Shown piece after piece: positions 31,399 through 57,754 of a stretch of DNA of 64,000 nt (position 1 is its first letter; each line of letters opens with the position of its first letter). The position numbers were made by a program, and so were the translations under genes. Below the pieces are notes generated by a model that saw only the letters and a list, made by a program, of their open reading frames with translations, ran no database searches and had not been told where the DNA came from. This DNA is from Bugula neritina (taxonomy: Eukaryota > Animalia > Bryozoa), in assembly GCA_964035545.1 (NCBI GenBank), contig OZ037768.1:24027319-24091318 (forward strand), given 5' to 3'.

Positions 31399-34300
31399 CT
31401 AAGTTGAGCTTTGAGGGCTGGTAGAGGCACCCGAAAACTGGCTGGAGACGCTGTCGGGTGGAAGACAGTCTAAGTAGTCATCGTCTGGTATGTAGACAGC
31501 TGAGTCATCGTTGCTGTACAGAGAGTTCATCTAAAAGAAACATTTTAATATATTATATAATATATATTACATTATATTATATAATATATTATATTATATA
31601 TATTACATTATATATATTATATATATTCTATTATATTATAATATTATATAATACATGCAGTGAGAAGAGGCTCTCACTCAGGGAGTCTAAGAGAACAGCT
31701 GCTTCCCACAATATTGTTTACAAATCACATGCTAAGTTTATCATTTAAATGCTGTTATTAGCTACCAGGTGAAATAAATCATAAATCTCACTATTCACAA
31801 CAGCTATTAAATTTTTAGCTTCACTAATGAGCAACATATTTAATTGAAAATCTGTTTATAACCAGAGCTTTATTATCCATATTAGCCCTCAACCCCCCCA
31901 CCTCCTACTAACTCACCATGGATGGATAGGAGCCATGACTCATCATCTCTTCTGGGTGAGAATTGTTATAGTCTGGAATCTGCTTCCAGGACTGTTGGTG
32001 GTACGGGTCGATATTTTTCAGCCCGTTGTCCATTCTGAGTGGACTTTGGGCTACCATAGGTATACCTTGTAAGCTGCCTGGCATATTCTAAAAATAAAAC
32101 AAATTGTTTAAAAATAAATTGTAAAGCAAACTATATTGTCCTAAAATTAAAATATGCAAATCAAAAAGAGAGCAATATGAATCTAATGTTTACTAAGCTT
32201 GCAATAATATTCTTTTAGCAAAATTAAAGTTTTAATTCATGTCTTAGAAAAATTTTTATCTGTATTTTTCCAATGTTAGAAAAGACAAAAGTTGAGTCAC
32301 TGTAAATTATTCAAATGTAGGATAGCTGCAAAAGACAAGCAGCTCTGAAGACGTAACTCAGTTGTTAAACTACTCTTTATAATTAACCAACGCTCCCTCA
32401 AAACTTCACCTGGTAACTACTTCAATCTGATTAAAAGAACACTTTGTCATAATGAACTTTGATAGTTACCTTCTCTTGCTGCTGTAACTGTTTCATCAGA
32501 ATACTTTTCTTCTTGTCTTTACACCTTTTATTCTGGAACCAAACTCGAATGACTCGAGCACTGAGACCCGTCATCTCGCACAAGTGGTCCTTCATTAGCG
32601 CGTCTGGTCTGGGATTGGCAGCGTAACAAGTACGTAACGTCTGCAACTGCTTCTCAGTCAGCACTGTGCGAACTCTCGTAGGTTTACCGTCCTTTCTCTT
32701 CAGCTTGTTGTTGCAGACGGATTCTACAGACAGAGAAGATTGTGTAAGACAGAGACAAGAGTTATGGTTCATACAGGAGTTAAATAGTTGGGAGATGTTG
32801 GATTGTATACTGTATATTTACATACAGAGACGTTTGAGTATACAGTTGTTATAACTTTACAACTGCAAATCATAGTAGCAATGGGCTATAGTTCTAAAAG
32901 TTACTTCTATTTTTACCCAAAAAATAATCTGTAGGAAAGCTACAACAGTTTTATAAGCATAGCATTTCAAGTATAAATAAATAATTAACATTCAGGCTTT
33001 TGTGTAGTTTACACTTTTTGCTAGAAAATAAACGCAAGATGCTAAATCCAAAGGGGTCCAGGGTTAGTTGAAAACATTTAAGATGTTGAATAAAATGTCA
33101 GGAAAGACATTAAAGCAGCAAAATTGCTATTTCAATGCCACAGAGCCTTTGTTCCATAGCTAGAGGTAACCAACCACATTTATTGGTGTGATAGAGCTAA
33201 GACTAAGAGAAAAATCACAGTTGGCATTGCAAAGAGTGCTGCATGTTTCACGGCAGCAGCAGCGGCAGCAGCAGCGGCAGCAGCCTTAATGCTAACATCT
33301 GAAGAGAGAGAAAAATGTGAAGAGATGGTTTATTAGAGGATTCGAGTGGATTCAGTGTTTGTTTTCCAGTTAATCTAAGCCAGCAAATCAATGCCAGACC
33401 AGCTGCAAGTCTAAATAAAGTGCTGTGATAGAATTTAGCATAATAACGATGTACACCTCAATGATTCGGATAGATTTGATAACAATAATAACTTCTACAG
33501 TTACCGTTTATATTGAGTTTAAAGCAAATCATCGCCTTTTGAACACAAGGGAACTCATATCATTCTAATGTTTAGATTCAACTGTATTAGCAGGGACTAA
33601 CCGTGCAGAGTTCTGGTGGGGTCCTGGTGGTGTGGTTTGTGGTTGTTGTTTATATTCGGAATGAGTCTGTCATCTTCACTTTCTAAGACTGAGTTTCTAT
33701 CTAACACTTCGCTATCTTCTTTACAGAACAGTCCCCCCTCCCTGTGTGAGAAATAGTCTCCTGGTTTTAGCTGACGGCTACAGGCAGTACAACGGAAGCA
33801 CTCTATGTGGTAGACATTGTTGTCAGCTTTCATCATCAAATCATTCTTAGTCATCGCAACCCCGCACTTGGCACAGGACGTTACAAACAACCTACAGCAG
33901 AATATTTACAAAATTTTATAGCATTTCCTCCATTTTATGGTTTTTTAAAGCCAAACGTGCCCGTTTTAATATTACATATATATAAATATATTATTTATAC
34001 TTTGTGCTTATGCAAGCAACAATAACTTAAATTATAATAAACATGCGTAAGTTGCAGCAGTTACGAGTACATTAATTGAAGTTAGGAAGTATAGCTTTAT
34101 GCTTGTACAGCTCTTAACATTCAAGCAACTGTGCTTTTTCATGCGTGATTGAATAAATTCAGTTATAATGTTATAAATAAAATGTAAAAAGCTTTATTAT
34201 TATTATCATTATATATAAAATAAACATATATGACGTATAAATGGAGTAAAGAAATATCTTATTTTCACTGAACAAATTTACAAACTTGAAGAAGCTGAGA

Positions 34301-37300
34301 AAGAAGGTAGAGATAAGAGATTAGAAAAGGGCTGATACAGCAGGTATAAATAACAGCACTTCTTATCTCCCCGCTAGTTTGCAGGGTGTAGAAATTCTTG
34401 TTTCACTTAGAATAAACAATTAAACACCAATTTAGTGATAAGACCAGTGAGCTAGTAGCTTCATATGCAAACAACAAGCAACGCAGATACAATTCTGATT
34501 GTTTAAAAATTTCACATCAGAGTAACAAAGCAAGCTTAATTCACTTGTTTCCCAAACATCAATTCCGTAGTTGCATAAACTGATACCACAAGTTGGGTAA
34601 TTTGAGAGGAAAGAAACTTCATCTAGATTAGTTGTATGACAATACGCCTGTAAGGTAATACTATTGAAAGAATTTTCCTCCAATATTTCAAGTACCGCAA
34701 GAAGGGAGATATGTGAGACGTGAATAATTCATGAGTTACAAACTGACTGTTGAACACGAGTTTGGGCTCAATAATTTCTCCTCAGCCAATCAGATGCCCC
34801 GATAGAACACCCTTCATACTTCACTGCTTAGTATTTGCAGATCTACTTAAGTAGTAATAATGATTTGGTTATTTGTTTGATACAAAAGAGATTTAAACAG
34901 ACTAACTTTGCCTCCATCATAAACACAAAAAATGTAAAATAAATCCTTTTTATTTACTTTTCACATATGCTAAGTTTTATAATATTAAAGATTGCTTGTT
35001 AGAACAATTTTGTAAAAATTTGTTCAGCTTGGCCAAAAAGATTTCCCCACACACATATATCTTCAGGTGTGTCAGAAGGGATCAATATTCCTCCCAGTAA
35101 TTTAATTCAATACCAAAATATTCAGCCTGCGGGTGAATCACAACCTTGTATGATTATCATTACGATTATTACAATAATTAATGTTATTTAAAAAGAGCAT
35201 TGTACTAAGCAGCGTGTACACTTGTATACTAGCAGGTATAATTTACCTGTAATAGCAGCATGCTGTATACATATTGTATACTAAAACAATGAATTTAATA
35301 GTTGCGTTTGAAGCTGAAAGATTTGTTTAATTCTAGCCTGCTGCGTCAGCTTCAAACTTCTAATCAGCTGCTTTTATTTTAAATGATATGTAGTTGATAT
35401 TGTTGTAGAAATTCTTAATTAATGGTGATTATTTGAGTTATATTTAATAACATATGCTGTTGGTTGTTCAGTTTATGCTGAACGTTGAAATGAATGAAAC
35501 AGTCAACACAAAACCTGCCCTTATGACAGACTTGAAGGATGATCTCTTTAAAAACAGCTTATTATGACCACTTAACTTTCTATCTACAGCATATGCAATG
35601 CTACCATGCATAGAGTGTCATAGATAGCTGAGCATATGCCAAGTGGCAGTCACTTGCAGGTTGTTGTCATATAAAGAGACTAATAACAGCAAGTGCTTGC
35701 AGGTTGCCCAAAAAGTTATATAACAGAAGAATGAGACTCCTAAATATATCTATAAAGTTGTAGGACTAGCTACTAGATGCTGAGGAGATGCAATCAGATG
35801 ATTTGGTTAACTTAATAAACCCAACAGCAAACAATAATTATAATAAATATAAACAAATACTTTTTGTGGTTGAAATGGTTGGAGGTGTCATGCATTGTAT
35901 ATATTACTGAAGTAATTAGCACGGCCAGTGAGAGAATCTTCTTTGTAGATGACTTAGAAAAGTTGAAGGTGAAAAAGCCGTTTAACCTGACAAGTAAACT
36001 AATCTAATGCCTGTTTTTTATTTCTCCTATTATCGGAAGATGATTAGGAGCTCCTAAATCAATGATGTAATTGCAAATAATTTTTTAAAATATTGTTGCC
36101 AATACAATATGTTGTATCAATTGACGCAAACAAAGTTTCCCAATGTCTTCACTCTCCAGTTGTAGTAAACAAATAAAAATAAACATAAATTGAACCAAAT
36201 AAATGTTATGTTGCTTATTGAGTGAAAAAATTCTCTAGCCTTGCAATTTGCAAAGAAATAGTCAATTATGACTTAGTTTATTACAGATGTATAGTTCAAT
36301 ACAATGTTAACTTCAGCATAATCTGGTTTCTCTTGAGTAATAATAAGAATCTATACATAGTACTAATACTAGCATGTGCTGTCTTGTTTATTACAAGTTT
36401 AGATGCGAAAAACCAGTTCGAAAAATATTTTCTTGCCAAGTTGCAGAAATTTATTTTCTCTTTTTGAAATTTATATCTTAGAGTTTTAAATAAGTTTGCT
36501 TGGTTGTTTATTTTATTTTTATTGCCAGAGCTGCGAGGTGACTCACCTGTTATAATCTGTCTTGCAGTAAGCTCGGCCTCCCCTCAGAAAACACGTGCAG
36601 TTCTCGTCTAGGTATGTGTGACATTCGGCACAACGTAAACAGGCGCTGTGCCACTCCAAGTCGGGTGTGACTTTCATGACGTAGGGGTCTGTGATGTGTC
36701 TGTTGCAACCTGCGCATACGGGTGTCTTCGGCTCCACTCTCTCCGGGAGCACCGACTTCACATGGGCACAGTCCATGCTCTTCACATCTGAAACAGGATT
36801 TGATAGTTTGACTTTGTAAATTCAATAAGTAAACATTTTTTAGCAAACAAGAAGAATTTTTATTAAAAATGAAATTATGGGAAAGCATTATGTTAGTAAA
36901 AGTTATTTTTATTAAATATATACTTTGCCTGTCTCTGTTAATGTATTATTATAAGATAAGATGATAGTCTGTATTTAGAATAAAATCCTACGCAACTGTT
37001 ACGGCAAACTTGGTACTTCATGATATAATGTATCATTTAAATGTTTTACTTATTTTTATACAGTTTATTTTTAGTCAAAAACTAGTTGCCCAAAAAGAAA
37101 TATTAACTGCAGAAATATTATATTCATGATAATATAATTAAATTAATATAACTGAGCTGCATTGGGAAGAAATTTATATTTCATGCATCTTATAACATGG
37201 TCACCACTAAGACTGTTGATTGTAATTTATACAACATTATCTTATGTTAACAACCCATAGTATATACTATATTATATACTATATTATATAATATTATACT

Positions 37301-45217: not shown

Positions 45218-48200
45218 CTATACCTTCTCTATCATCTCGGGCACAGCCTGTAATCAAACACAGCCGATCAATAAAACAACTTGAAAAGACAATCACTGTA
45301 CACAATGAATTTCAATGAACGTTTCACTGACTTGAATTGTGTTGAGACTTGAGAGTGCAAATCTGTCAACGTCTGTATAAACATGAGACTTACAGAGTGT
45401 ACAGCAGACGGACAGACACACAGACAGACAGGAAATAGTAACTCAAACAGTTCGTATAAATATTATGTAATTTATTTACACATGAATACTTACACAAATC
45501 AAGTACTAATGTTAATTGTATTTAAGAGAAAGTTGAAGTAAATAAAAGCACATGTTAATTGATATTACAGCCCCACTGGTTGAAGGAAGAGAAGCTGGTT
45601 GTATTCAAAAGTCAAATAAAATCACATTTTATTACAAATTTGAAAATTGCATGATTGTCAAAATTGCATGCAATATTTTTCCACTCACAAGATATAGAAA
45701 TTCAAACACTATTTAACAAACTCTCTGTTGGTTATATTAGAAAGGTAGGCCATGGGTAGTCCAGGTGAGGAAATTTGATAATAATTATAAATATAATTAT
45801 GATATGTAAACAGAGGGCATAGCAGCAGGTGCTAATTACAGCTAATAGGTGGACTGTTGAATATAACACCATTGAAGTGTGTCGTCTAATCATCTACATA
45901 TTGGCTGACAAGTTAATTGCAGCTCAAAAAATGAATCATCCAATCAGAGATCAGCAGGAGCCGTGAGTTACCCACTTCAACTCAATGCCACTGAATGGAA
46001 ATTAATAAGGAAATATTGTCTACCATACTATAGGAGGGGTGAGCACTCATGTGAGGGGCTTTGAGGTGACCAAGGGGCATATTGAGGTAACCAACAGGCA
46101 TTTTGAGGATCAAGTAGCCATCCATAATCATTTGTAAACCCCAGAAGTACATAATTGTAAACATTAGTGCCTCAAGGCTTCAGTTCTCATTGGATGAGTT
46201 TAGACACTTGAGATTCAAATAGAGAGAAGTGTTGATGGGCCATTGAACTGTTGAAAAGCTGCGTTGAAAGAACTTAATAATTCTCTTAATATTTTCAACC
46301 AACACACAACAAGTTGTTACACTTAGAGAAAAAAAATTCACCAAATCAGGCAAATTCTAGAAACTTCTTTTGCTAACTTGGCAATTAAATCAAGCATTAT
46401 GATTTACAATGATGAGGAGAAACTGCAATATGTTGGTGTGAATTGCATGAAATAGTTGATATTAGAGAGAGTTGAATTTTCACCACAGTTGTCAGTTTGT
46501 GTCATGATTTCCAATTAATTAGCACTTTCGGCAGAGTAAATGCTCTCCACATTGAACATAGCCAACACTGAAAATTAATATTAATTTGAGGTGTTACTAA
46601 CTAGGAATTAAATTAGCAATAGTAGTAGTAGTAAAGTTAGTAGCAGTAGTAGTAGTAGTGGCATGTTAGTAGTAATAGTAGTGGTAGTTACAGTGACAGT
46701 AATATCAATATAATAGTAGTAGTGATAGTAATAGTAGCTGTATTGGTAAAAGTAACAGAAGGTGTGAAGTTCCATAAAGTTGTGTTTGAAAGAGAAGACA
46801 ACTCCTGAAAGCACAGCTAACCAAACAGTAAATAGAGTTTGAGAGTTATCTGTCCAGAGTGTAATGACTAGAGAAAACTGTGAGCATACCGAGAGGCAAG
46901 AGAGGTCTAGGAGCTAAAATCAATAAATCAGGTATTTACTGATGATTCACATTCCTAGACAGCACCACGGTGAGAGCCAATGAGAGTCTTACAAGGGTGA
47001 CATCATAACAACAGCATTTCTCTGTTGCCACGCCTTAACTGTCTAGTGAACTCAACTCTCATCTGATTACTTCAAAATAGAGAAGTTAGTTAACTGACCT
47101 TGAAAAGGTCGGCAACGAGTCCGTAGTCAGCCACCTGAAAAATTGGAGCCTCAGCATCCTTGTTGATGGCTACAATGACTTTGCTGTCCTTCATCCCCGC
47201 CAGATGCTGGATGGCCCCGGATATTCCGACAGCGACGTACAGTTTCTGGAAATATTCAGGAGAGCAGACATTACACACCCTGTCCCTTCAGTTGTCTCCC
47301 CTTTAAACAGGAGAGATAATTACTCTACCTCTCTCCCTTTACACAGGGGGAGATATTTACTCTACCTCGCTCCCTTTACACAGGGGGAGATAATTACTCC
47401 ACCTCTCTCCCTTTACACAGGGGAGATAATTACTCTGCCTGTCTGCAGGAAATAACTGGACTTACAGGTGCAACTATTTTCCCAGTCTGACCAACTTGCA
47501 TGTCATTCGGTACAAAACCGGCATCTACAGCGGCTCTTGACGCCCCCACGGCAGCGTTCAGCTTGTCAGCGAGATCATACAGCATCTGGAAATTCTCTCC
47601 ATTCTTCATACCACGTCCTGAAAACAGACAGAGTTTATACTCTTACTGCTACCACTACCACTACTAATACTATTAGTACTGCTACTATTACTGCTCCTGC
47701 TACTACTACTACTACTGCTACTACTAATACTATTAGTACTGCTACTACTACTAGTACTACTACTACTGCTACCACTACTAATACTACTAGTACTGCTACT
47801 ACTACTACTGATGACTCACCTCCAGAGATGACGGTATCGGCACTAGTCAACTCTGGTCTGTCACTCTTACTCAACTCTTGACCTTCGAAGGTCGTCAGGT
47901 CATTTGTTACGTCAGCAGAAACTAGTAATGAAAACTTTCAATGTGTAGACAACTTTTACATAAACAAATGACCATAAATACAGTTAATAGTATCTAGTAT
48001 AGTTAGTGGTATATATAGTGCAGTTGCTAGTATATACAATACAGTGACTAGTACACCCAAGAGTGGACAACTTCAAGTACATACACGGTTCGGCGCTGGT
48101 GCTGCCCCCCAACTCTGCTGGAGGAAAAGCTGTGGAACGGACTGTGACTATCTTGATGGGGTCTTTGTGCTTCAACGTCATAATTGCATTACCTGCGATA

Positions 48201-50056
48201 GAAATTACCTGCGAGATAAATTACCTGCGAGATAAATTACCTGGGAGAGTACAAATTACATGTGCTTAGACCTAATTCTACAAAGCATTAGTTTGGAATT
48301 AAGCTATGGAACTTTTTGATCCAGAATCTGAAGCTACAATAGTTTGTCTTCATTGTAAATGCTAAGTTTATTAGTAAAATATATTAATGAAAAGTAACAA
48401 AAAGTAGTTCATTGAGCGATCTTATGCTGTAGACTGACGTACCGGCATAAATAGGTCGGACAAACGTATCGGGATCTTCTATGCCTATGATGTCAGATAT
48501 CGGACTAATATCTAGTTTGGCAGCTACTCTGGGTAGAAGGTTCTAGAAGTACATATCACGGGATTAGAATGAATGACCAGTTCTTAGCAACGTTACAATT
48601 AACTAATGTAAAGCTTTGAGTATAACTCTATTATAATACAGTATGAGCTGTTGATCTGTTCAATAGACCTTTACATGGCTGTGTCTGCAGCTAACAGTAT
48701 AATGAAATAGTATGCAGTATAATGGAATAATACGAAGTATAATGAAATAATATGCAGTATAATGAAATAATATTGTAACTTGAAGTAAAATACTACTTGG
48801 TGACAGCACATTTGTTTGTGTCCATTATTCATCAGTGCAGAACGAATAAACAATACATTTTCATTCTAGCCAATGATAGAACGAGAAATTTGGCGAACTA
48901 TGTATCACCTCACGCTATACATTTTGCTCATGATAGTAACATATATGGATATTATAGACTTACTTTGCCAAATGCAGAGGCGTTGGAGAAGATGTGAGTG
49001 AAATTGAACTGCTTGTGTGCCTCAAGAATGACTGGAGTGAGAGACTCGGCAAGGAAACCTTTGAACACGGGATTGTCAGCGAGCAGGACCTTGCTGACCC
49101 CCTTCACCTTGCCAACCTCCTCCGCTACCTGATAGGTAGTTCATGAATTACTATACATGATAAGGTATATATCAGTTAGTAGAGCTCTCAGCTGGCTCAA
49201 ACTCTAAGGGGGGGGTTATTAACTAACAAATCTTAAATTTGTTGAATTTTATCATCTGAATCTATATAATAACTCTGGCTTGGTAGACACATTAGTTTCT
49301 GCTATTTGTGAAGGCTTGACCTTGTGCTATGCTAAAGAGGGGACAAATCCTGAAACAGCTGCTGTATACAGATTGAGTCACAGATGGGAGAATGGAATAA
49401 ACTAGTGTTTCTACCAAAGCACTTATGAAAGGTGTTTGAATTTAATTCATAGTTCAAAAGAATCTCTAGGAATTACGTGCCCAGATAAACATACCTGATG
49501 ATGAAACACAGCATTTCTAATAATAAAATGATTTAATCAAATATTATCATAACATTCCTCTTATACTACAGGTACGCAGTCACTTGTAACATACGTACCT
49601 TGGCGCAGTCTGTTCCAGCCACCAGACACGTAATATCTCCCCCTACTTTAGATGCCGCTGTGAGAGTGTTGAGTGTAGAGGCTTGTAGACTGGCATTGTC
49701 ATGCTCACACACGACTAGCGTACTGGCAAACCTCTGGGCCAGTGAATTCTAACACAGAAGATCAGCCAATATCACTGATAGTCATTTTACACATTTTAAG
49801 ACCCAATTCCAAACATAAGCACTTATACGACTAGTTGATTTTAAATAGATGGTAAAAAATATCAATGCATATATGATTGTGAGATGCATGCAAAAGGGGG
49901 TTGAGTTATGCAACAAAGTTTTGCATTAAATTTAATTGCTTAAAAAGTTTTGAAAATTAAAGATTTGATAATGTGAATTATCATAATATAGGCAATTATA
50001 AATATTCAACTCACCAGTTGCTTATGTAGTGTAAGAACTCTTTTGAAAGATAACAT
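45218..50056 (-). CDS. ETFA: Electron transfer flavoprotein subunit alpha, mitochondrial
   Basis: Nine exons: 50056-50015, 49748-49599, 49128-48964, 48542-48443, 48192-48085, 47921-47820, 47617-47466, 47245-47099, 45247-45218 (TAG). Presequence-like [26 protein letters not shown]. Motifs: [27 protein letters not shown]...[56 protein letters not shown]...[22 protein letters not shown]. Confidence 0.97.
47645..47812. repeat. (ACT)n-type trinucleotide tract in an ETFA intron
   Basis: Imperfect ACT/GCT/AAT repeats. Confidence 0.85.
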
Positions 50057-51990
50057 TTTTATCTCTAGTTCAATGAATTAAGCTGAAATTACTAAAAATA
50101 CAAATATAAAAGTTGAAAAATAATTTAGAAATACTCATGATCGAAAAAATAGATTAGAAATCAATTAGCAACGCACATATTCATAATGATAATTACAATT
50201 GTTGACTTTTATCATTTTTATTTTATTAATAAAAACTGTTTTAATTATGATCAAACTGTTTTAGTTTAACAATAACAATAATTATAATAATATTAATATT
50301 ATTAAATTTAATTATTATTTATATTAAAATACTTAAATTAGATTAAGTTGATTTATGTATATTCATTATTTCGCTATCATTATGACTTTCAGGCATGAAG
50401 TTGCAAATTCAGTAATTTACTTTTAATGCATTTGTCACTCTTAGAGATGCAAATTCAACATCCTAAATTAGAAAATACCAAAATTAACTTTAGACTGCTC
50501 AGCAAACTTATATAAAATGAAAATATTTCAATGTGAAGGTTATGTTGTTACATTGATGTCTCTTTTGCTAGCAAACCTTAGCGCGGGCTTATTTTCATCA
50601 AATGCCCATAAAATCAATGAGACTTGCAAAGAGGTTAAGTGCTCACAGGCTTTAAATGCTTACTCTGTTGAGCTGCTTTGAGAGACATCAAGCTGATAAT
50701 CTGGTCAAAGGTTATCCATATACCAATCACCAATGGTTATTATAATAATGATACTTCACAATTGTCACCATTGTCATTGCTGAAACTCAGGGCAAAATGT
50801 GGAGTAGTGTGCTTGTAGAGTAATGCTGCTTGCTATAGGTATAAGTATATCGCTAAAACTGTTGTAGATCCAAATCTAAAGATCATTATGATTATGGTTA
50901 TATATATATAATTATATTTATATTATTATTAATATATATTTAATTTTATGATAAAAATATACTGAAAGTGAAATAGTAATTCAAATTGAAATTGTGAATA
51001 GTCAATACTCAATAACTTTCAACTCAAAGTAACTTCTACTTTAAAGTCATACTGATAGTTTAAACACAAACACTAATACTAAGTTTTACATACTTCAAGT
51101 CACTGAGCTGGAATAGATATTATTGAGTTCGATGCTTCAAGTTTAAGGACTAAAAGTAAAAGTAATTGTTACAGTTAGTGTTACTAGTGTCACTACTACT
51201 AGTACTACTACTACTACTACTACTACTACTAGTCTAGTTAAGTAGTTTTACTTTGTGAGTAGAGTTTCTCATAGAAAAATATTCACTTTTACAAAATTCT
51301 GGTGAATAGGAATAGCTCTAGTGCATAGTGATAGTTAGACATGAGTCATGGTAATTTACAGTTTGGTAGATTTAATTTTATGCTGATAATTTATCAGAAT
51401 CATAAAATTTATTATTCATGACATAATCAGAATGATAATAGGATAGCCTACTATTTAAAACTCAATCTAAAGTTTTAGTTTCTAATTGCTGTTTTAATAA
51501 ACTGTTTAATTGCAGTTGTTGATGGTTTCAAATAATCATATTTCAAAAACAGCTATGATGGATTAGATAACAACAGGCTGGGCATATAATGTCAATAAAT
51601 TACTATTTGCATTTAGTTTTACTCATACTGGCTATGCTTTTCTATTGTGTTCAGTATGGATGGAAAAAAATGGTCCATGTTGTATATTCATGTAAGTAAA
51701 ATATAACCATGGCTATACACCAGTTTTTAAATTAAATTATGTTTCTAATTGTTAGTAATCATAATGGAAGGAAATTCAACATATGGAATCTAATTCTTTA
51801 TTTGTTAGTGTTTTATGGTGTGATGTAAATAAAATCTAGTTCATGTGATAATAGGAGTCATTATTTAATCACTACTTCCTTTTTAGATTGAGCACACAAT
51901 GAGCCAAGTTGAACACTTTTTCAGTGGTTTGATATTCACAGTCAGTTGAAAGTGTTTCTGATATATTCTTAGTTGTGTTGGGCACTTAAG

Positions 51991-54900
51991 ATGGGGACAA
52001 AGGCTAGGTTAGTTTGACTACTCAAGTATAAAATGAAAACTTTGCTATTCTCCTCTGAGACAAGCTAATGAAATGTTGCAGTTCTTGTTTCAATATCCTT
52101 GTTGGTTTGCTGTTAGTAATGAGGACATATTGGGCTGTGAGATAAATACCTCGTGTTACAAGTTATAAAATGGAAGTGAAGATTTAGTAATTGAATAAGT
52201 ATGACATGCGTTAGCTGACTGAAACATAAGCTGTTTCATGGAAGTGAGGCTATTTTCTCGTGTCATACTATATATTTTTTACTCAGTCTCATAACATGTC
52301 ATTGTGTTTCCCTAATCTAGAGCTCATATCTATGAATCAAAAGCAGGAAAAGATGAGGCTGAAGATAAAATTGTCTGCTTCAACCATTCCAAAGAGCTGG
52401 CCAACATGAGGTTAGAGGGCGTGACTTAGTCTAATAAGTAACTGTTTGAGATTATAGGGTTATCTCTTAGACATGTTTCATGTGGTTACTCACTGAGCTA
52501 AAGGGTTGTAATATTATGTTCTGATGTTAAAATAACCCCCTTTTTACTACATCCTTGTTCTAAATATTTAGGATCAAAGTGAAAAAATAACTTGAATTGA
52601 CTGAAAGCTCTGGGATTTAGCATCACACGGTGATACAGTTTAATTTACTCTTGGAATGGTCTAGTGTTGACATATTTCACTACACACAGTGAGATATTCC
52701 AATATTATTTCACTTGGTGGAGTTGTCCCTCTTTTTCAGATGTCATGAGAAAGTAGATTTCTTTCTACACAGACCTATAGTTGAGTACGTGGTGATATTT
52801 CTTATAATTGCCGATGCAATTCTTGTGACAGCGTCACTTCTCCTTGAAATAAAGATAATAGAGCAATCAGGTTAGAGTTGTCTCATCTCATTTAGTTTTA
52901 ATTTTTATTCACGAAATTTAATGTTGAAAGTGAAAGGTTACTAGACCCCTGTAAACAAATGCCATAACAGCATTTTCAATGTGTTTTCTAATGAATTTAA
53001 CAGTGAAAAACTGACTTGAAATCAAGTCATATATTTCAATATATCATAAGAAATAACGATGACATAAATTGTTTTACTCTGCACACTGAACTTGTGTGAG
53101 AATTGAAATGAAATGGAAATGAGGAGTATACATTGAACAGCTGTTATTTTAGGGAGTTTGTGTGGGGTAAGTTTCTATGACAACCATGACTCATATTTCT
53201 ATTACACTGGCTAGGAACATTCCAGAAGTATTCTCATTAAACTGCCTTCTTTTTATTTGCGTTTCATGTTATATTTCGAGGCTGAAATTATCAACTGGCT
53301 GTAATTTTATTTGCTATCAACTTATGCTGCTTTAAAAGTTGCAAACATTGTATTTCTGTAGTCGGCATTATTTCTGAGCAAACTCATGGTACTTTGTTTC
53401 AAGTTGAAACAATATTTTGTAACGAAGCTGAAATAAAATGTCGACTGATACACCGCCCTCTGGTGGACATCAATTCTCTAATCTAATTGAGGATATTGTT
53501 TGGCAGCATTGTGATTTCTAACCTGATTCAGACAACTTTGTAGAAAGTGCCCCGCTGTGCTTGTCTTTATTATTTAATGCAACTTGACCTTGACATGACC
53601 TTGATGTGACCTCTGTCACTAACTTTCTCAAACAAACATCTTTTACTTCTTATAAGTTTCACGCTAACATTTTTTTGAAAAAGTTGATCAGAATGACAAA
53701 CTTTTCTGTAGCTACTCCTATTTATCTCTTTCTATTAGTACCTCACGCACTCGATAGTCACCGTTACGAATCTCCTGTCTTACTGTAGCTGAAGATGCTG
53801 TGACAGCCACCACCACCACCGCATCAGGAGCCACAACTCCTCATTCCGCTAGTCATAGTAGTCTAGATGTGGCCGCAGAAGCCCTGCACATTAGCAGCTT
53901 AGTCATTCTCACTCTCTTTCTTATTGAGGTAGGAAAGATTCATCTGTTTGCTGTGTTTGGTTGGCGTGTAAAACTCTGACATTCTGATATTGATGTGTTA
54001 CTTTGCAGATATTTCTCAAGTTGTATGGACAAAGAGAGAAATTCTTTAAGAGGAAGTTGCAAGTGGTAGATAGCTTTATAGTGGCGATATCGTTTGGCCT
54101 TGACATTGCGGTGCTGATCATCAATGATATTGACTCTAGTATTATCAACGGTCTCGGCCTCATCATCATTCTACGACTCTGGAGATTTGTGCGGATAGTA
54201 AATGGTAGGTGTTTATGGTATGTAGGAGTGGAACCAGCAGTGGGTGGTGTGTAGGGGTGTAGCCAGCAGTGTGTGGTATGTAGGGGTGTAGCCAGCAGTG
54301 TGTGGTTTGTAGGGGTGGATTCAGGGTCTCTAACCATTATATCACAGCATATATCTGGAATAGTATACATTTGTTTTCATTCAATTAGATTCCACAGTTT
54401 CAATTCTATATGATTAAATACAGTATCTGTAGAAGTGAGAATCATCATGTGTCACATTCATCATCTGCCTGTCAGCATGTGTCATATTCACCACCTGCAG
54501 CTGCCTGTCACCATGTGTCACATCCACCACCTGCAGCTGCCTGTCACCATGTGTCACATCCACCACCTGCAGCTACCTGTCACCATGTGTTTCTGTCTTC
54601 TGCAGGTGCTGTCGTAGCGACTAAAGAGAAGCTGTCAGAGGAAATGCATGAAGTTAAAAGACATAACGCTGAACTCACAGAGCGAAATGCAGAACTCGAG
54701 GTAACTACGGCAACCTCCCTAACAACACATTGTTTGACTACCAGCAGTGTATAGTAGTACCTGAATATAGTCAACAGTGTATAGTAGTACTTGAATATAG
54801 TCAACAGTGTATAGTCATACCTGAATATAGTCAACAGTGTATAGTAGTACCTGGATATAGTCAACAGTGTATAGTAGTACCTGAATATAGTCAACAGTGT

Positions 54901-56671
54901 ATAGTAGTACCTGGATATAGTCAACAGTGTATAGTAGTACCTGAATATAGTCAACAGTGTATAGTAGTACCTGAATATAGTTAGACTCTCTCATTCCCTT
55001 AGATTGTCACAGCTCTTCTCGATTTGTGACCAAGTTGCAGTTTATTCAAGGGTTGTGTTCTCTGTGTGAAGTGTGTAAGAGAGTGGGTGACTCCCAACAC
55101 CTCAATGTAAAAGCTCTGCTCTGTATTACAGCTGGCGATAGAGAACAAGGAGAAGGAAATAGACTTCCTGAAAGGGAGGTTGGCGAGATACGAGCCAATA
55201 GACATGGTGCCCACCGGCTCTACCCGACTTCCTGCGTGTTAGTATATTTCCTGTTTTACATTCTACCAGGATGGGGGGGGGTAAAAATGTGCCCTCGATG
55301 TGTTATGATAGCATGAGTGATACTTTGTGTAAACAATAGTGACTGCTTTAGTTAGTAAAGTGTTGTTTGAACATTTCACTCTCTCATCACCCTCAGGCTT
55401 GAATACAGCAATCTAAGGCTATAGTTCAACAGGATGGAGGTGGGGAGGGAGGCTGATGTAAGGAAGATATTATTAAAGCTCTAAACTGATACAAATCACA
55501 AGCTAGCAGTTGACAGTCTGTAGTGTGAAAAGAGTGAACTTATCAGCTGCTCTGATTACAATAACATTTCTATTACACAGTCTTATCTGTTACATCTTTC
55601 CCAGCTTCCTTCATAACTGACAGCACCTTATCTGAACATGTGATTCCTTGTCACAGCATAATTGTTTAAACACTGCTGTTCTTATTGCAATAATTCTTGT
55701 AGGGGGGGGGGGGTTGTGACATTCGCATTGTTTACATTGACTCACAGTCTATGCTTTCCTGTAGCCTGTGAACTCAACTTTACTTTATGTGAGGAAGGTA
55801 GGCCTCTCAGCTATTGTAGAGGTTGACGTATGCCCTCATGACATCACCAGTGACCTAAATAATCTGCTGCTTGCAGTCTATTTCAATTCCAAACGTTAAA
55901 TATTTTCCAACTGTTGTTAGATCTGCCAGAGACGAGGGAATTCCCCAAACAGGTGCTGGGAGATGTTACGGATGACGAGGACTACAGGGTGCAGGGTTTC
56001 GCAGGTCAGTTGATTGTTTCCTTTTTTACCAAAGAGTGGTGGTTCGCTGGTGGGTGTGGAGGTGTAGGTTTCGCTTAACTTGAGTTTCTGTTTGTGTGGC
56101 GTGACAAGAGCATTGCTAGCTCGTAAGTTGAATTATTACCTTGTAGACGTGCACCATACGACAGGGAAGCCCAGAATTACTCTAAGTACTGCAGGTACGG
56201 CTTTCCAGGCCTACCAGCCCGGAGCCACGTACCAGCCCACCAGCCAGTACCCCACCGAGCAGCTCCACAGATCCCCCAACGCTGTCGGCAGCAGTGCCAG
56301 ACTAGGCAGTGGTGGAGAAACTGGTGGGGGCTATAGGGGGACTGAGGAGCCAGGAGTGGAGACAGCTGATGAATCAGATGTTGTGTCTATAAAACCTGCC
56401 AAATACAGGAGTGGAAATACCTTTACAGTGAAAAAGGTGAGTAAGGGGGTGGGGGGAGTGTGGTTATTGAAAGGTGGAGGGGGCGTGGTTATTGAGAGGT
56501 GGAGGGGGCGTGGTTATTGAAAGGTGGAGGGGGGGCGTGGTTATTGAAAACTAGATATTTTGTATCTAGATAATAAAACTGGTTTATTGAGCTATTAATA
56601 GCAACACATTGCCTGCTGCCTACATAATGTTTATATTTCTGTAGGATGGAGTTCCAATGACCTCTTTATGA
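51991..56671 (+). CDS. Voltage-gated proton channel (Hv/HVCN1-TMEM266 family) with a long C-terminal tail
   Basis: Exons: 51991-52007, 52321-52410, 52740-52870, 53789-53928, 54009-54204, 54606-54700, 55132-55237, 55921-56004, 56195-56436, 56645-56671 (TGA). S1 VVIFLIIADAILV (Asp112-equivalent), S2 LHISSLVILTLFLIEIFLKLY, S3 VVDSFIVAISFGLDI, S4 LIIILRLWRFVRIVNG (RxWRxxR plus Asn). A coiled coil follows, there is no pore domain, and the protein ends DGVPMTSL*. Confidence 0.9.
54465..54980. repeat. 33-bp (54465-54590) and 30-bp (54742-54980) minisatellites flanking one Hv exon
   Basis: Units CTGCAGCTGCCTGTCACCATGTGTCACATCCAC.. and CAACAGTGTATAGTAGTACCTGAATATAGT. Confidence 0.88.
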
Positions 56672-57754
56672 GCTACAAATTAACTGTAGACCTCGCTGTC
56701 ACCGTCCAATCTATTGTCTATTCTCTGACTTATGATCAGAAATCATACTTGGTCTTCCATCATGTGTCTAATTATGTTTCTTTAATAAACTTTTTGTATT
56801 TACTACATGAAAAAGAAGACAACTTCACTTATTATTTGCATAATATTATGTTTACACTCTTTTATCATTGTAAATAATTTGTTCTAATCATATCAAGTAT
56901 TTATGTATTATCTATGGCTGTGACTGATATTATTTACCACAATGAGATTGATTTAGTTCATGTTGCAAGAAAATTTCATTATACTTTTTTATTATTATTA
57001 ACAATTTTATGCTGTGTTGAAAGAACTTTATTTAACTGTGAATCATCATGATAATAATATACGATTATATAATCACTATAATCTGTGTCGTGAATTTGCT
57101 CAAGGAAAATAAAAGTTAACACAATATATCATAACAGATTTAAAATTGTCTTCACATAATAGTAGGCTGCAGAGAGTTGACAGTTTATAGACTGATTATT
57201 TGACTGTGATTTTGTGCCGATCTAATACTCTGGTACTTAGTCTAATATTGGGATGCTAAACTTTATTGAGTTTAGCCACATTATTTTATTGAAACATTTC
57301 ATTGCAGCTTTCGGTCATCAAATTTTAAATAATTCAATTGTCAAGAAAAACAGTCAAACCTTTCTCCCAGAAATAAATTATTTATGTTTGCTATTTTTAT
57401 AATTTTTTTAGTACCATGATATAACTTAAATTTTAATTATATAGCAATAGACATGTTATAATGGGAAAGCTATAAAAGTATAAAGTAAATAAAACCACCA
57501 CGCAGCGCAATAGGATGCATCATGGTTTGACTCTTCGGTCGACTCTTTCAGTTATAAATGATGAACACAGCGAGTCATCTTCGAGATAAAAAATAAGTGG
57601 GCATAACTCTTGAGTATATTTCCTGCCACTTTGTTTTGCTTTCTTCATTGCAGGTTTGTAAGGCACAAGTGTCGGCTGCTTTTGTTCACTGTAACAATAC
57701 TAATTAGTCCAACTCTTTGACAAAATATACTAACAACCTGCAACTGTTGGTTGT

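What the first reader, a model, noticed from the sequence alone, without database searches (positions are those of the whole stretch)
51991..56671. The gene in the TMEM266 position keeps true proton-channel residues
Seen: S1 Asp (IIADAIL), S2 His/Phe/Glu/Lys (LHISS...LFLIEIFLK), both S3 Asp (VVDSF...GLDI), S4 RLWRFVRIVN, then a coiled coil and a long disordered tail. Established: Hv1 needs the S1 Asp112 for H+ selectivity, whereas TMEM266 (HVRP1/C15orf27) lacks it, does not conduct protons and has a long C-terminus. Inference: either the TMEM266 lineage came from a functional Hv at this locus, or this is the ancestral Hv locus from which HVCN1 moved. This protein combines an Hv-type sensor with a TMEM266-like tail length and genomic position.
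Basis: partly seen in the sequence, partly recalled or inferred. Interest (0 to 1): 0.8.

Follow-up and report, generated by a model that had tools for sequence, protein, structure and literature searches.

The report
Bryozoan proton-channel gene beside ETFA
A moss-animal gene lying where vertebrates keep the non-conducting voltage sensor TMEM266 is an expressed, complete-looking voltage-gated proton channel with a long tail, which suggests, but does not prove, that TMEM266 descends from an old, once-conducting branch of the proton-channel family.

Summary
Spliced transcript contigs from four studies fix a gene with ten coding exons (ATG 51991, TGA 56669-56671, 391 aa). It encodes a pore-less S1-S4 sensor with the full proton-channel (Hv) signature: S1 Asp, S2 His/Phe/Glu/Lys, both S3 Asp, S4 RLWRFVRIVNG. 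A coiled coil and a disordered tail of about 130 aa follow.

The genome is a cheilostome bryozoan. The gene order SCAPER, Islet, ETFA, this gene matches SCAPER, ISL2, ETFA, TMEM266 in fish, chicken and goat, though gene orientations differ.

The gene is not the canonical Hv1, which lies 0.94 Mb away and groups with Watersipora, annelid and priapulid Hv1. Three more Hv3-like genes exist. None of the five is TMEM266-type.

New here:
- The gene keeps ancestral introns that TMEM266 also keeps and canonical bilaterian Hv1 has lost.
- Its last micro-exon (…VPMTSL) is shared with an arthropod family that NCBI names "TMEM266-like".

Sequence trees leave its place open: joining it to the TMEM266 families is not rejected (AU p 0.24). 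Six Hv-family loci in other phyla are not beside ETFA.

Verdict: a real, probably conducting Hv-family channel. Its TMEM266 orthology is plausible (about 0.55) and unproven. The scan had already noted two of the Hv3-like paralogues elsewhere in this genome.

The parts
50806..50838 (+). 3' end of a non-coding first exon of the channel gene; the exon extends further upstream by at least about 220 nt, and its start is not fixed
   Evidence: The loose 5' letters of transcript contigs (table 7) match here with 1 mismatch and nowhere else in the window. The GT donor is at 50839 and the AG acceptor ends at 51886.
51887..52007 (+). Exon with the start codon (ATG 51991); codes MGTKA plus 2 nt. The phase-2 intron that follows is at the same place as in sponge Hv1, TMEM266 and the sea-spider long form.
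   Evidence: Joint 52007>52321 in 4 runs; in-frame stop upstream of the ATG; phases; intron comparison.
52321..52410 (+). N-terminal cytoplasmic exon (29 whole codons)
   Evidence: Joints in 4 runs; GT..AG.
52740..52870 (+). S1 exon, with the selectivity-filter Asp (IIADAIL). The Glu119 equivalent is Ser and the Asp123 equivalent is Glu. The exon ends in a phase-1 intron.
   Evidence: alignments A2.
53789..53928 (+). Thr/Ser/Ala-rich S1-S2 loop and S2 (His, Phe, Glu). It ends with the ancestral phase-0 intron directly after the S2 Glu.
   Evidence: Transcripts of the sibling lineage carry an in-frame 12-nt insertion behind 53818 (table 4).
54009..54204 (+). End of S2 (Lys), S3 (both Asp) and S4 (RLWRFVRIVN, plus the first base of the Gly codon). 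The phase-1 intron inside the Gly codon is shared by all Hv and TMEM266 genes examined.
   Evidence: PDB hit to Hv1; 115 database hits, those with a recognisable S4 being Hv-type.
54606..54700 (+). First half of the coiled coil
   Evidence: Joints; weak matches to the coiled-coil families ZapB and DivIC; aligned in register with the Hv1 and arthropod coiled coils.
55132..55237 (+). Second half of the coiled coil (…EKEIDFLKGRL…). The donor at 55238 removes the in-frame stop that lies 3 nt downstream.
   Evidence: Joint 55237>55921 in 3 runs, and 55235>55921 with two replaced letters in the fourth.
55921..56004 (+). Tail exon
   Evidence: Joints; phases.
56147..56436 (+). Main tail exon, rich in Thr, Gly, Ser and Pro, with no Pfam family above its cut-off
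   Evidence: Transcripts of the sibling lineage differ at about 7% of letters but carry no indel here (table 8).
56645..57153 (+). Last exon: 8 codons (DGVPMTSL), TGA at 56669-56671, then a 3' UTR reaching at least 57153
   Evidence: Joint 56436>56645 in 4 runs; C-terminal motif comparison.
47189..49748 (-). ETFA exons (ETF and ETF_alpha domains, and an N-terminal exon with …STLVVCEH…). The gene lies head-to-head with the channel gene; the first-Met exon was not located, and the known 5' parts of the two genes are about 1 kb apart.
32431..36785 (-). Islet-type LIM-homeobox gene (two LIM exons and a homeodomain exon)
   Evidence: Pfam Homeodomain E 9.6e-17; LIM-type ORFs.
15667..16007 (+). SCAPER_N exons of the SCAPER gene, which runs over roughly 13-27 kb

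Best explanation
**What it is (shown).** An expressed gene with ten coding exons in a cheilostome bryozoan, encoding a 391-aa protein:
- a short N-terminus;
- one S1-S4 voltage-sensing domain with no pore domain;
- a coiled coil directly continuing S4;
- a low-complexity tail of about 130 aa ending in …VPMTSL, which has the form of a class-I PDZ ligand.

**How it most likely works (inferred from residues; about 0.7).** It is a voltage- and pH-gradient-gated, proton-selective channel of the Hv type.
- Protons pass through the sensor itself.
- The S1 Asp pairs with an S4 Arg to form the selectivity filter.
- The three S4 Arg, the Trp, and the Phe/Glu/Asp charge-transfer centre gate it.
- The coiled coil makes it a dimer, and the tail end tethers it to a scaffold.

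**Where it belongs (inferred).** It is one of five Hv-family genes of this genome and is not the canonical Hv1 orthologue.
- It belongs to an old, intron-rich lineage that also holds the arthropod proteins NCBI names "TMEM266(-like)". The link is a shared terminal micro-exon and an in-register coiled coil (about 0.8).
- It lies in the SCAPER-Islet-ETFA-X position that TMEM266 holds in vertebrates. It is therefore probably the lophotrochozoan counterpart of the TMEM266 lineage, still in the ancestral proton-channel state (about 0.55).
- On this reading, the bilaterian ancestor had two Hv-family genes: an ETFA-linked one that kept the old gene structure, and a DUF1168-linked, intron-poor one that became canonical Hv1 and probably HVCN1.
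For: **Gene model and expression**
- GT..AG joints at all junctions appear in contigs of 4 runs from 4 studies.
- The frame is single and open, 391 codons.

**Hv signature**
- Alignments A2 and one search show Asp at the Asp112 column, and His, Phe, Glu and Lys in S2.
- They also show Asp at both S3 columns and RxWRxxRxxNG in S4.
- The best solved relative is human Hv1. All database hits with a recognisable S4 are Hv-type.
- Asp112 as the selectivity filter, and Val at that place in TMEM266/HVRP1, come from PMC10377628 and PMC4148356.

**Not the canonical Hv1**
- The gene at C4:23.136 Mb groups with Watersipora Hv1 (100*) inside a canonical bilaterian clade (95*).
- Holding this gene together with that clade gives p-AU 0.044. 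Holding it with the bryozoan Hv1 pair gives 0.069.

**Synteny**
- ETFA, Islet and SCAPER lie in the same order as in Poecilia (TMEM266, ETFA, LIM-homeobox within 10 kb) and as in goat and chicken gene lists.
- Islet-Scaper is a known block conserved from sponge to human (PMC3514665).

**Introns**
- Sponge and coral Hv1 have introns N1, N2, post-S1 (phase 1), S2-Glu (phase 0), pre-S3 (phase 0) and NG (phase 1).
- TMEM266 and the sea-spider long form keep all of these.
- This gene keeps N1, N2, S2-Glu and NG exactly, and the post-S1 intron two codons downstream.
- Canonical Hv1 of priapulid, hemichordate, annelid, limpet, the bryozoan itself, Ciona and fish all lack the S2-Glu and pre-S3 introns.

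**Canonical Hv1 has its own linkage**
- It lies head-to-head with DUF1168 in both Priapulus and Glandiceps.

**Tail end**
- DGVPMTSL here matches DVPMTSL (Argiope), NVPVTTL (Pycnogonum, also a terminal micro-exon after a phase-0 intron), DIPMTSL (Limulus) and DVPITAL (Strigamia).
- When the fetched proteins were scanned (241 at that point), only the two long forms then in hand had this ending.
- The coiled coil matches the arthropod profile in register at E 2e-4.

**Other support**
- No TMEM266-type gene was found elsewhere in the genome.
- A clade of this gene, the arthropod family and vertebrate TMEM266 is not rejected (p-AU 0.24).
- Limulus TMEM266-like is nearest to chordate TMEM266 clusters by language-model features (0.93, a lead only).
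Against: **Against a link to TMEM266**
- No tree unites the gene with TMEM266 or with the arthropod family. All three sit on stems of 1.6-2.4 changes per column and float.
- By BLAST the gene is closest to slowly evolving Hv1s (coral 111 bits) and farthest from TMEM266 (50-57 bits).
- The shared introns are ancestral states. They exclude descent from an intron-poor Hv1 but do not prove common descent with TMEM266.
- The gene's coiled-coil intron lies 7 codons upstream of the one TMEM266 and Pycnogonum share.
- Arthropod TMEM266-like proteins and vertebrate TMEM266 share departures in S4: a basic residue before R3, and no Asn-Gly. This gene has none of them. If those departures are inherited, the gene is not their orthologue; if they are parallel, the arthropod-vertebrate link is itself weak (tails beyond the coiled coil give E 0.11).

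**Against ancestral synteny**
- Relative to Islet, both ETFA and this gene are inverted compared with vertebrates.
- ETFA is not beside the Hv-family gene in Ciona, Glandiceps, Owenia, Pocillopora or Oscarella, nor beside the mite TMEM266-like gene. The sea-spider look-up showed no neighbour within 10 kb.

**Against conduction**
- The Glu119 equivalent is Ser, the Asp123 equivalent is Glu, and the S3-S4 loop has no His193 equivalent.
- No current has been measured.
Confidence: 0.55

Rival explanations
1. A lineage-specific Hv paralogue. The gene arose in the known lophotrochozoan expansion of Hv channels and lies beside ETFA by chance or by a later move. TMEM266 is related only as a fellow member of the Hv superfamily.
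For: - The review PMC10377628 reports 3-4 Hv genes in bryozoans, brachiopods and phoronids, some with large loops and large intracellular domains.
- This genome has five.
- The gene shares loss of the Glu119 equivalent with two of the Hv3-like paralogues.
- Close relatives found in the databases are bryozoan exon fragments only.
- Orientation relative to ETFA and Islet differs from vertebrates, and six other Hv-family loci are not ETFA-linked.
- Trees are unresolved.
Against: - With five Hv-family genes among roughly 15,000 genes (a rough figure of mine), chance adjacency to ETFA on the side away from Islet is about 3 in 10,000. The same four-gene order recurs in vertebrates inside a block already known to be ancient.
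- The terminal VPMTSL micro-exon is shared with chelicerates and a myriapod, so the lineage predates Lophotrochozoa.
- The gene keeps the S2-Glu intron, which every canonical bilaterian Hv1 examined lacks, so it did not come from the bryozoan Hv1.
- AU p is 0.069 and 0.044 for those placements.
Confidence: 0.28
2. A single ancestral locus. The bilaterian ancestor had one Hv gene beside ETFA. This gene is the resident copy, the bryozoan canonical Hv1 1 Mb away is a local duplicate, and in vertebrates HVCN1 and TMEM266 arose from that one gene by the vertebrate genome duplications, HVCN1 having moved or lost its ETFA partner.
For: - Both bryozoan conventional genes lie on the same chromosome, 0.94 Mb apart.
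- TMEM266 is reported as restricted to vertebrates (PMC6392501).
- In one quick tree TMEM266 sat next to ambulacrarian Hv1 (SH-aLRT 90).
Against: - The bryozoan canonical Hv1 groups with annelid and priapulid Hv1, not with this gene.
- Canonical Hv1 shares a derived phase-0 intron directly after S1, and a head-to-head DUF1168 neighbour, between a priapulid and a hemichordate. That locus is therefore as old as Bilateria.
- Fish HVCN1 and Ciona Hv1 share a derived intron 10 codons before the S1 Asp and lack the ancestral introns that TMEM266 keeps. This is more simply explained if TMEM266 split off before tunicates and vertebrates parted.
- From my memory of the human map, HVCN1 (12q24) and TMEM266 (15q24) lie in different paralogy regions.
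Confidence: 0.1
3. A functional rival, independent of the ancestry question. Despite its residues, the protein is a non-conducting or leaky voltage sensor, like TMEM266 or AcHv3-type proteins, acting through its tail.
For: - The Glu119 equivalent is Ser and there is no His193 equivalent.
- Its arthropod relatives have lost R3 or Asn214.
- TMEM266 is a working sensor without proton current (PMC6392501).
- The long tail with a PDZ-type end suggests signalling or anchoring roles.
Against: All residues known to be required are present: the S1 Asp, three S4 Arg, Trp, Asn-Gly, Phe/Glu/Asp and the second S3 Asp. These include four of the five places where TMEM266 departs from Hv1. Even the more altered AcHv3 still conducts protons (PMC10377628).
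Confidence: 0.25

Closest known systems
Voltage-gated proton channel Hv1 / HVCN1 (human, Ciona, coral and other animals)
   Same: - A pore-less S1-S4 domain.
- Asp in S1.
- His, Phe, Glu and Lys in S2.
- Two Asp in S3.
- RxWRxxRxxNG in S4.
- A coiled coil continuing S4.
- A phase-1 intron in the Gly codon after S4.
- The best matches in the PDB and in the protein libraries.
   Different: - It is not the orthologue of canonical Hv1, which is a separate gene in this genome.
- About 130 extra residues follow the coiled coil, ending in a PDZ-type motif.
- The Glu119 equivalent is Ser, and the S3-S4 loop has no His193 equivalent and is 4 residues longer.
- It keeps the S2-Glu intron that canonical bilaterian Hv1 lacks.
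- It lies beside ETFA rather than DUF1168 or TCTN.
TMEM266 (HVRP1, C15orf27) of vertebrates
   Same: - Position in the gene order SCAPER, ISL, ETFA, X.
- Coiled coil followed by a long disordered tail encoded by extra 3' exons.
- Introns N1, N2, S2-Glu and NG at the same or nearly the same places.
- Closest superfamily is Hv.
   Different: - TMEM266 has Val for the S1 Asp and Met for the second S3 Asp.
- Its S4 reads WRxKRxxDA, and its N-terminus is about 100 aa against about 45 aa here.
- Its tail is about twice as long and has no PDZ-type end.
- It lies tail-to-tail with ETFA; this gene lies head-to-head.
- Pairwise similarity is the lowest in the set (50-57 bits).
Arthropod 'transmembrane protein 266(-like)' / uncharacterised long Hv-like proteins (Limulus, ticks, spiders, Pycnogonum, Strigamia)
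   Same: - A C-terminal …[VI]P[MVI]T[STA]L ending; in the one member mapped (Pycnogonum), as here, it lies on a terminal micro-exon after a phase-0 intron.
- An in-register coiled coil (E 2e-4).
- A long low-complexity tail.
- An intron-rich gene structure.
   Different: - They have Glu, not Asp, in S1.
- S4 has lost R3 and/or Asn-Gly, often with a basic residue before R3.
- Their coiled coil carries a highly conserved VEDLEHEVAYLKEKLKK motif that is only partly recognisable here.
- The mite gene is not beside ETFA.
Unconventional Hv3-type channels (Aplysia AcHv3 and lophotrochozoan relatives)
   Same: - The same phylum-level expansion.
- Larger loops and intracellular parts than Hv1.
- Three such genes in this genome keep the S2-Glu intron too.
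   Different: Hv3-type genes lack the first S4 Arg (xLWRxxR or xSWRxxR here, xPWRxxR in molluscs) and have S1-S2 loops of about 50-110 aa in this genome. This gene has all three Arg and a loop of about 30 aa.

Membership tests
Hv (voltage-gated proton channel) family | A single S1-S4 voltage-sensing domain with no S5-S6 pore domain | tested here: met
   The exon map covers S1-S4, then a coiled coil and tail; no further transmembrane exon lies in the transcript. A local Hv profile matches the S1, S2 and S3/S4 exons.
Hv (voltage-gated proton channel) family | Acidic selectivity-filter residue in mid-S1 (Asp112 of human Hv1) | tested here: met
   Asp in IIADAIL lies in the Asp112 column. Its role is taken from PMC10377628.
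Hv (voltage-gated proton channel) family | S4 signature RxWRxxR with the conserved Trp, followed by Asn-Gly | tested here: met
   RLWRFVRIVN^G.
Hv (voltage-gated proton channel) family | Charge-transfer centre (S2 Phe and Glu, S3 Asp) and the second S3 Asp (Asp185) | tested here: met
   LFLIE, VVDSF and GLDI, aligned with Hv1.
Hv (voltage-gated proton channel) family | C-terminal coiled coil continuing S4 (dimerisation) | tested here: met
   52 residues after NG align without gaps to the Hv1 and arthropod coiled coils. There are weak matches to the coiled-coil families ZapB and DivIC. Dimerisation itself was not tested.
Hv (voltage-gated proton channel) family | External Zn2+ site (His140 and His193) | tested here: inconclusive
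   The S2 His is present; no His lies in the S3-S4 loop.
Hv (voltage-gated proton channel) family | Voltage- and pH-gradient-dependent, proton-selective current | not testable with these tools
   Needs electrophysiology.
Canonical bilaterian Hv1 orthogroup | Groups with Hv1 of other phyla; intron-poor sensor region (no S2-Glu and no pre-S3 intron) | tested here: not met
   The gene lies outside the 95* canonical clade; AU p 0.044 when forced in; it keeps the S2-Glu intron. The paralogue at C4:23.136 Mb meets both criteria.
TMEM266 / HVRP1 | Non-acidic residue (Val) at the S1 selectivity-filter place | tested here: not met
   Asp here; Val in shark and fish TMEM266; PMC4148356.
TMEM266 / HVRP1 | S4 with Lys before the third Arg and Asp-Ala in place of Asn-Gly; Met at the second S3 Asp | tested here: not met
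   Here the residues are Val, Asn-Gly and Asp. The TMEM266 features are from PMC6392501 and the sequences.
TMEM266 / HVRP1 | Coiled coil followed by a long disordered C-terminus | tested here: met
   199 residues follow S4, about 130 of them beyond the coiled coil, rich in Thr, Gly, Ser and Pro. This is shorter than the roughly 250 residues of TMEM266. No sequence similarity between the tails was detected.
TMEM266 / HVRP1 | Genomic position next to ETFA, on the far side from ISL2 and SCAPER | tested here: met
   for the window; for fish; for goat and chicken. The order is the same; the orientations of ETFA and of this gene differ.
TMEM266 / HVRP1 | Sequence-based orthology (a clade with TMEM266) | tested here: inconclusive
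   Not recovered in any tree, but not rejected (p-AU 0.24).
Arthropod TMEM266-like long forms | C-terminal …P[MVI]T[STA]L ending (on a terminal micro-exon in the one gene mapped, Pycnogonum) and a conserved coiled coil | tested here: met
   DGVPMTSL on an 8-codon last exon after a phase-0 intron, against Pycnogonum's 7-codon last exon; motif list; coiled coil E 2e-4.

The most novel reading that the evidence does not exclude
TMEM266 is not a vertebrate invention. It is the vertebrate end of a bilaterian-old, ETFA-linked Hv paralogue that began as a true proton channel with a scaffold-binding tail. This bryozoan gene is its least-changed living member. Loss of the S1 acid and of Asn-Gly in vertebrates (and partly in arthropods) came later and in parallel.
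Probability: 0.5. Interest if true: 0.7.

Novelty: new member of a known kind. Interest (0 to 1): 0.55.

Why it matters
TMEM266 is a conserved brain protein and a working voltage sensor whose output is unknown. Published work calls it vertebrate-restricted, with Hv1 as its nearest relative.

If this bryozoan gene and the arthropod "TMEM266-like" proteins are its kin, three things follow:
- The family gains an outgroup that still looks like a channel.
- The order of changes that silenced conduction can then be read off living sequences and tested by swapping residues.
- The long tail gains a first testable handle, the PDZ-type end.

The work also gives the Hv field a gene-structure and synteny framework for sorting the many invertebrate Hv paralogues: an intron-rich type against an intron-poor, DUF1168-linked type.

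If the linkage is a coincidence, the gene is simply one more untested member of the known lophotrochozoan Hv expansion.

Tried and rejected
**Searches that gave little**
- Pfam on single exons gave no Ion_trans hit, because the exons are too short. That blank means nothing.
- The word-based protein search cannot reach full-length relatives from a 65-aa exon. Mixed alignments of full-length Hv proteins plus exon rows were used instead (A2, A5). They returned TMEM266 and the arthropod family, but no full-length orthologue of this gene and not its own product.
- In the representative library the close relatives are exon fragments only.
- A first MAFFT alignment of exon rows with one full-length protein misplaced S1 and S2 (A1) and was dropped.

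**Trees**
- The 'careful' tree search on 67 rows did not finish in two runs. Quick trees and AU tests on 43 rows were used instead.

**Candidates rejected**
- A candidate at C1:14.158 Mb turned out to be a domain-IV sensor of a sodium- or calcium-type channel, not an Hv-like gene.
- A 581-aa hit (P0134) is a fusion of an Hv sensor with a glycosyltransferase, probably a gene-prediction artefact.

**Synteny look-ups**
- Hv-family genes of Ciona, Glandiceps, Owenia, Pocillopora, Oscarella, Priapulus, Patella and the mite Oppia showed no ETFA; Pycnogonum showed no neighbour within 10 kb. Asterias was not on record.
- The bryozoan canonical Hv1 is flanked by polyubiquitin and a PRL-type phosphatase, not by TCTN or DUF1168.

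**Tails**
- Profile comparison of the tails found nothing beyond the coiled coil.

- All database, family, structure-sequence and own-genome searches were made exon by exon, by reference. No search, fold or structure prediction was run on the joined 391-aa model.
- The exons were joined only inside local scripts, read from the window file by coordinates. This was done to check the frame and to give one row in local alignments, BLAST tables and trees.
- Musset et al. 2011 could not be read. The five Hv1-versus-C15orf27 differences are cited from memory and checked against the TMEM266 sequences fetched here.

Full report
**1. What is there**

The window is G000:C4:24027319-24091318 of a 216-Mb genome. 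The canonical Hv1 paralogue of this genome is 69% identical to the Hv1-like protein of Watersipora subatra. The transcript runs include "symbiont metagenome" RNA-Seq and an "organism A". The organism is therefore a cheilostome bryozoan.

Contigs of four runs from four studies were laid on 51300-57200. They skip exactly these introns, with GT..AG ends:
- 52007>52321
- 52410>52740
- 52870>53789
- 53928>54009
- 54204>54606
- 54700>55132
- 55237>55921
- 56004>56147
- 56436>56645

Such joints can only come from spliced RNA, so the gene is expressed.

The contigs are 90-95% identical to the window. They therefore come from a sibling lineage of the species. In the window itself all junctions are canonical, and the phases add up to one frame of 391 codons with a single stop, TGA 56669-56671.

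A non-coding first exon ends at 50838. The 3' UTR reaches at least 57153.

**2. The protein**

Aligned with Hv1 proteins from sponge to fish (A2), the product has these features:
- Asp at the selectivity-filter column of S1.
- His, Phe, Glu and Lys in S2.
- Asp at both S3 columns.
- RLWRFVRIVNG in S4.
- 52 residues in register with the Hv1 coiled coil.

It departs from Hv1 in three ways:
- Ser lies at the Glu119 column and Glu at the Asp123 column.
- The S3-S4 loop is four residues longer and has no His.
- The S1-S2 loop, about 30 residues, is rich in Thr, Ser and Ala.

After the coiled coil come about 130 residues rich in Thr, Gly, Ser and Pro. They match no Pfam family above its cut-off and end in DGVPMTSL.

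The S3/S4 exon alone hits human Hv1 in the PDB (E 1.5e-7), ahead of the Ciona voltage-sensing phosphatase (E 0.022). It finds 115 proteins among 1.84 billion representatives, and the 112 with a recognisable S4 carry the Hv motif. The named ones are Hv1 of priapulid, spider, flatworm, sponge, Ciona and hemichordate. No TMEM266 was among them.

The literature used here makes Asp112 the selectivity filter and puts Val at that place in TMEM266/HVRP1. TMEM266 sequences fetched here show Val in S1, Met at the second S3 Asp, and WRxKRxxDA in S4. The window gene has the Hv state at all of these.

I therefore predict a conducting, dimeric proton channel (about 0.7). No tool here can test conduction.

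**3. The neighbourhood**

- ETFA lies on the - strand at 47189-49748, the only ETF_alpha match in the genome. It is head-to-head with the channel gene, and the known 5' parts of the two genes are about 1 kb apart.
- An Islet-type LIM-homeobox gene lies at 32.4-36.8 kb (-).
- SCAPER lies at about 13-27 kb (+).

In the fish Poecilia, TMEM266, ETFA and a LIM-homeobox gene are direct neighbours in that order. Goat and chicken gene lists give TMEM266, ETFA, ISL2, (RCN2) SCAPER. Islet-Scaper is a published regulatory block conserved from sponges to humans. That paper's main text does not mention ETFA or TMEM266.

The four-gene order is thus the same in bryozoan and vertebrates. SCAPER and Islet are convergent here, as I recall they are in human. 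ETFA and the channel gene are each inverted relative to Islet compared with fish.

With five Hv-family genes among roughly 15,000 genes (a rough figure of mine), chance adjacency on that side of ETFA is about 3 in 10,000. I take ancestral linkage of ETFA with an Hv-family gene as likely, not proven.

**4. The other Hv-family genes of this genome**

Searches with the S3/S4 exon, with shark TMEM266, with Limulus TMEM266-like and with an Hv profile find five genes in all.

| Place | Type | Features |
|---|---|---|
| Window (C4:24.08 Mb) | Conventional, long tail | RLWRFVRIVNG |
| C4:23.136 Mb, 0.94 Mb upstream | Canonical Hv1 | Nearly intronless, RLWRIGRVVNG |
| C1:18.05 Mb | Hv3-like | No first Arg, S1 Asp kept, large S1-S2 loop |
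| C3:21.43 Mb | Hv3-like | No first Arg, S1 Asp kept, large S1-S2 loop |
| C1:32.70 Mb | Hv3-like | No first Arg, S1 Asp kept, large S1-S2 loop |

None of the five has TMEM266-type residues. The review PMC10377628 already reports several Hv genes in bryozoans, some with large loops and intracellular domains.

**5. Trees**

- In quick maximum-likelihood trees, the C4:23.136 Mb gene joins Watersipora Hv1 (100*) inside a canonical bilaterian Hv1 clade (95*).
- The window gene forms a clade with bryozoan exon fragments (99-100*) on a stem of about 2 changes per column, and is otherwise unplaced.
- Vertebrate TMEM266 (stem 2.3-2.5) and the arthropod long forms (stem 1.6) also float. TMEM266 sat beside ambulacrarian Hv1 in one tree and among sponge and cnidarian Hv1 in others.

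AU tests on the 43-row set:

| Grouping held together | p-AU |
|---|---|
| Window gene + arthropod family + TMEM266 | 0.24 |
| Window gene + the two bryozoan canonical Hv1 | 0.069 |
| Window gene + whole canonical clade | 0.044 |

Sequence alone thus mildly disfavours descent from canonical Hv1 and cannot decide the rest. By BLAST all the long-branch families are closest to slowly evolving Hv1s. TMEM266 is the window gene's weakest match.

**6. Introns as independent characters**

Exact exon maps give the following.

Sponge (Oscarella) and coral (Pocillopora) Hv1 have:
- two N-terminal phase-2 introns (N1, N2);
- a phase-1 intron three codons after the S1 "DLK" (post-S1);
- a phase-0 intron right after the S2 Glu (S2-Glu);
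- a phase-0 intron before the S3 "FD" (pre-S3);
- a phase-2 intron after S3;
- the phase-1 intron in the Gly of "NG".

Other genes compare as follows:
- Fish TMEM266 and the sea-spider long form keep all of these except the post-S3 one. They also share a phase-0 intron at the same coiled-coil position.
- The window gene keeps N1, N2, S2-Glu and NG exactly, and the post-S1 intron in the same phase two codons downstream. It lacks the pre-S3 intron. Its coiled-coil intron is 7 codons upstream of theirs.
- Canonical Hv1 of Priapulus and Glandiceps shares a different, phase-0 intron directly after "DLK/DLQ" and lacks the S2-Glu and pre-S3 introns.
- Owenia, Patella and the bryozoan canonical gene keep only the NG intron.
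- Fish HVCN1 and Ciona Hv1 share a phase-0 intron 10 codons before the S1 Asp and also lack the ancestral ones.
- Priapulus and Glandiceps Hv1 are both head-to-head with a DUF1168 gene. Fish HVCN1 lies beside TCTN.

These data fit two old lineages: an intron-poor canonical Hv1 with its own neighbours, and an intron-rich lineage. TMEM266 cannot easily be a late copy of an intron-poor HVCN1.

The caveat is that the shared introns of TMEM266 and the window gene are ancestral states. They exclude some histories but do not prove a common one.

**7. The arthropod link**

A mixed alignment search (A5) returned a family of 410-507-aa proteins from spiders, ticks, mites, horseshoe crabs, a sea spider and a centipede. 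NCBI names two of them "transmembrane protein 266(-like)".

- They end in DVPMTSL, NVPVTTL, DIPMTSL, DVPITAL or NPMTAL. The window protein ends in DGVPMTSL.
- In Pycnogonum, as in the window, these residues lie on a terminal micro-exon after a phase-0 intron.
- When the fetched proteins were scanned (241 at that point), only the two long forms then in hand shared the ending.
- The coiled coils match in register (E 2e-4).

I take this as good evidence (about 0.8) that the window gene and the arthropod family are one lineage, older than Lophotrochozoa.

Whether that family is truly TMEM266 is less sure.
- For: a basic residue before R3 and Asp/Gln-Ser in place of Asn-Gly; an "FRIV"-type end of S2; the identical intron pattern; and nearest language-model neighbours that are chordate TMEM266 clusters (0.93, a lead only).
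- Against: pairwise scores no better than to Hv1; no tail similarity (E 0.11); no clade in the trees.
- The window gene has none of those S4 departures. Either they arose in parallel, or the window gene is not their orthologue. This is the main internal tension of my reading.

**8. Synteny elsewhere**

ETFA is not within 10 kb of the Hv-family gene in Ciona, Glandiceps, Owenia, Pocillopora, Oscarella, Priapulus or Patella, nor of the TMEM266-like gene of the mite Oppia. The sea-spider look-up showed no neighbour at all. All but the mite gene are canonical or pre-duplication Hv1 genes, and mite genomes are scrambled. These blanks weaken the case for a single ancestral ETFA-linked Hv locus more than the case for an ETFA-linked paralogue.

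**9. Verdict**

- The gene is a real, expressed, probably conducting Hv-family channel with a long tail bearing a PDZ-type end. It is one of five Hv-family genes in a phylum already known to have several.
- It is likely part of an old intron-rich lineage shared with arthropods.
- That it is the counterpart of vertebrate TMEM266 is supported by gene order, gene structure and tail architecture. It is not contradicted by an AU test, but is not shown by sequence phylogeny. I put it at about 0.55.

**10. Method note**

All database searches were made exon by exon, by reference. The joined model was never sent to a search, fold or structure tool. It was assembled only inside local scripts, for frame checking and as a row in local alignments and trees.

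Noticed in passing
G000:C4:23136108-23137215 (L002, L010 2040-3237): This is the canonical Hv1 of this genome. S1-S4 lie on one exon, the only intron is in the Gly codon after S4, and S4 reads RLWRIGRVVNG. It is 69% identical to Watersipora Hv1-like. It is flanked by a polyubiquitin gene and a PRL-type phosphatase, not by TCTN or DUF1168.
   Followed up: yes
G000:C1:32697606-32698997 (L023 3606-4997): A fifth Hv-like gene. It keeps the S1 Asp and Glu, has an S1-S2 loop exon of about 110 aa, and its S4 reads LSWRVVRVINS (no first Arg, Ser for Gly). The exon-only and single-protein searches missed it; the Hv profile found it.
   Followed up: partly
L019 8579-14480 (Priapulus) and L012 2859-39359 (Glandiceps): Canonical Hv1 lies head-to-head with a DUF1168 (PRKRIP1-like) gene in both a priapulid and a hemichordate. 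The two Hv1 genes also share a phase-0 intron directly after the S1 'DLK/DLQ'. In the bryozoan, DUF1168 is on the same chromosome but 13 Mb away (C4:10.065 Mb).
   Followed up: partly
window 49569-50838: ETFA (-) and the channel gene (+) are divergent, and their known 5' parts lie about 1 kb apart. A shared bidirectional promoter is possible.
   Followed up: partly
window 53818: Transcript contigs of the sibling lineage carry an in-frame 12-nt insertion in the Thr/Ala-rich S1-S2 loop. The same contigs have many indels in the 3' UTR but none in the tail exons.
   Followed up: no
window 54216-54317, 54442-54590, 54745-54981, 56448-56549: Minisatellites with periods of 29, 36, 30 and 25 nt fill parts of the introns after S4, inside the coiled coil, and before the last exon. 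They produce long spurious repetitive ORFs on both strands.
   Followed up: partly
window 57852-58467: A microsatellite-like array of about 600 nt (6- and 18-nt units, TAATAC-type) lies about 0.7 kb beyond the last mapped 3' UTR base (57153).
   Followed up: no
window 63365-63883: A 172-aa ORF (+) with an SH2-like end and a WW-like stretch (LPNGW…W..P). It has no Pfam hit above cut-off. It is the next gene beyond the channel and unlike the vertebrate neighbours of TMEM266 (NRG4, FBXO22).
   Followed up: no
window 8216-9606 and 1261-2226: A class-V aminotransferase (selenocysteine-lyase or cysteine-desulfurase type) lies on the - strand, and an intronless 321-aa ORF that looks like a seven-transmembrane receptor on reading (not tested) lies upstream of SCAPER.
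   Followed up: no
P0038 (440 aa): A database protein with two Hv-type sensors in tandem, each followed by a coiled coil. Its origin is unknown.
   Followed up: no
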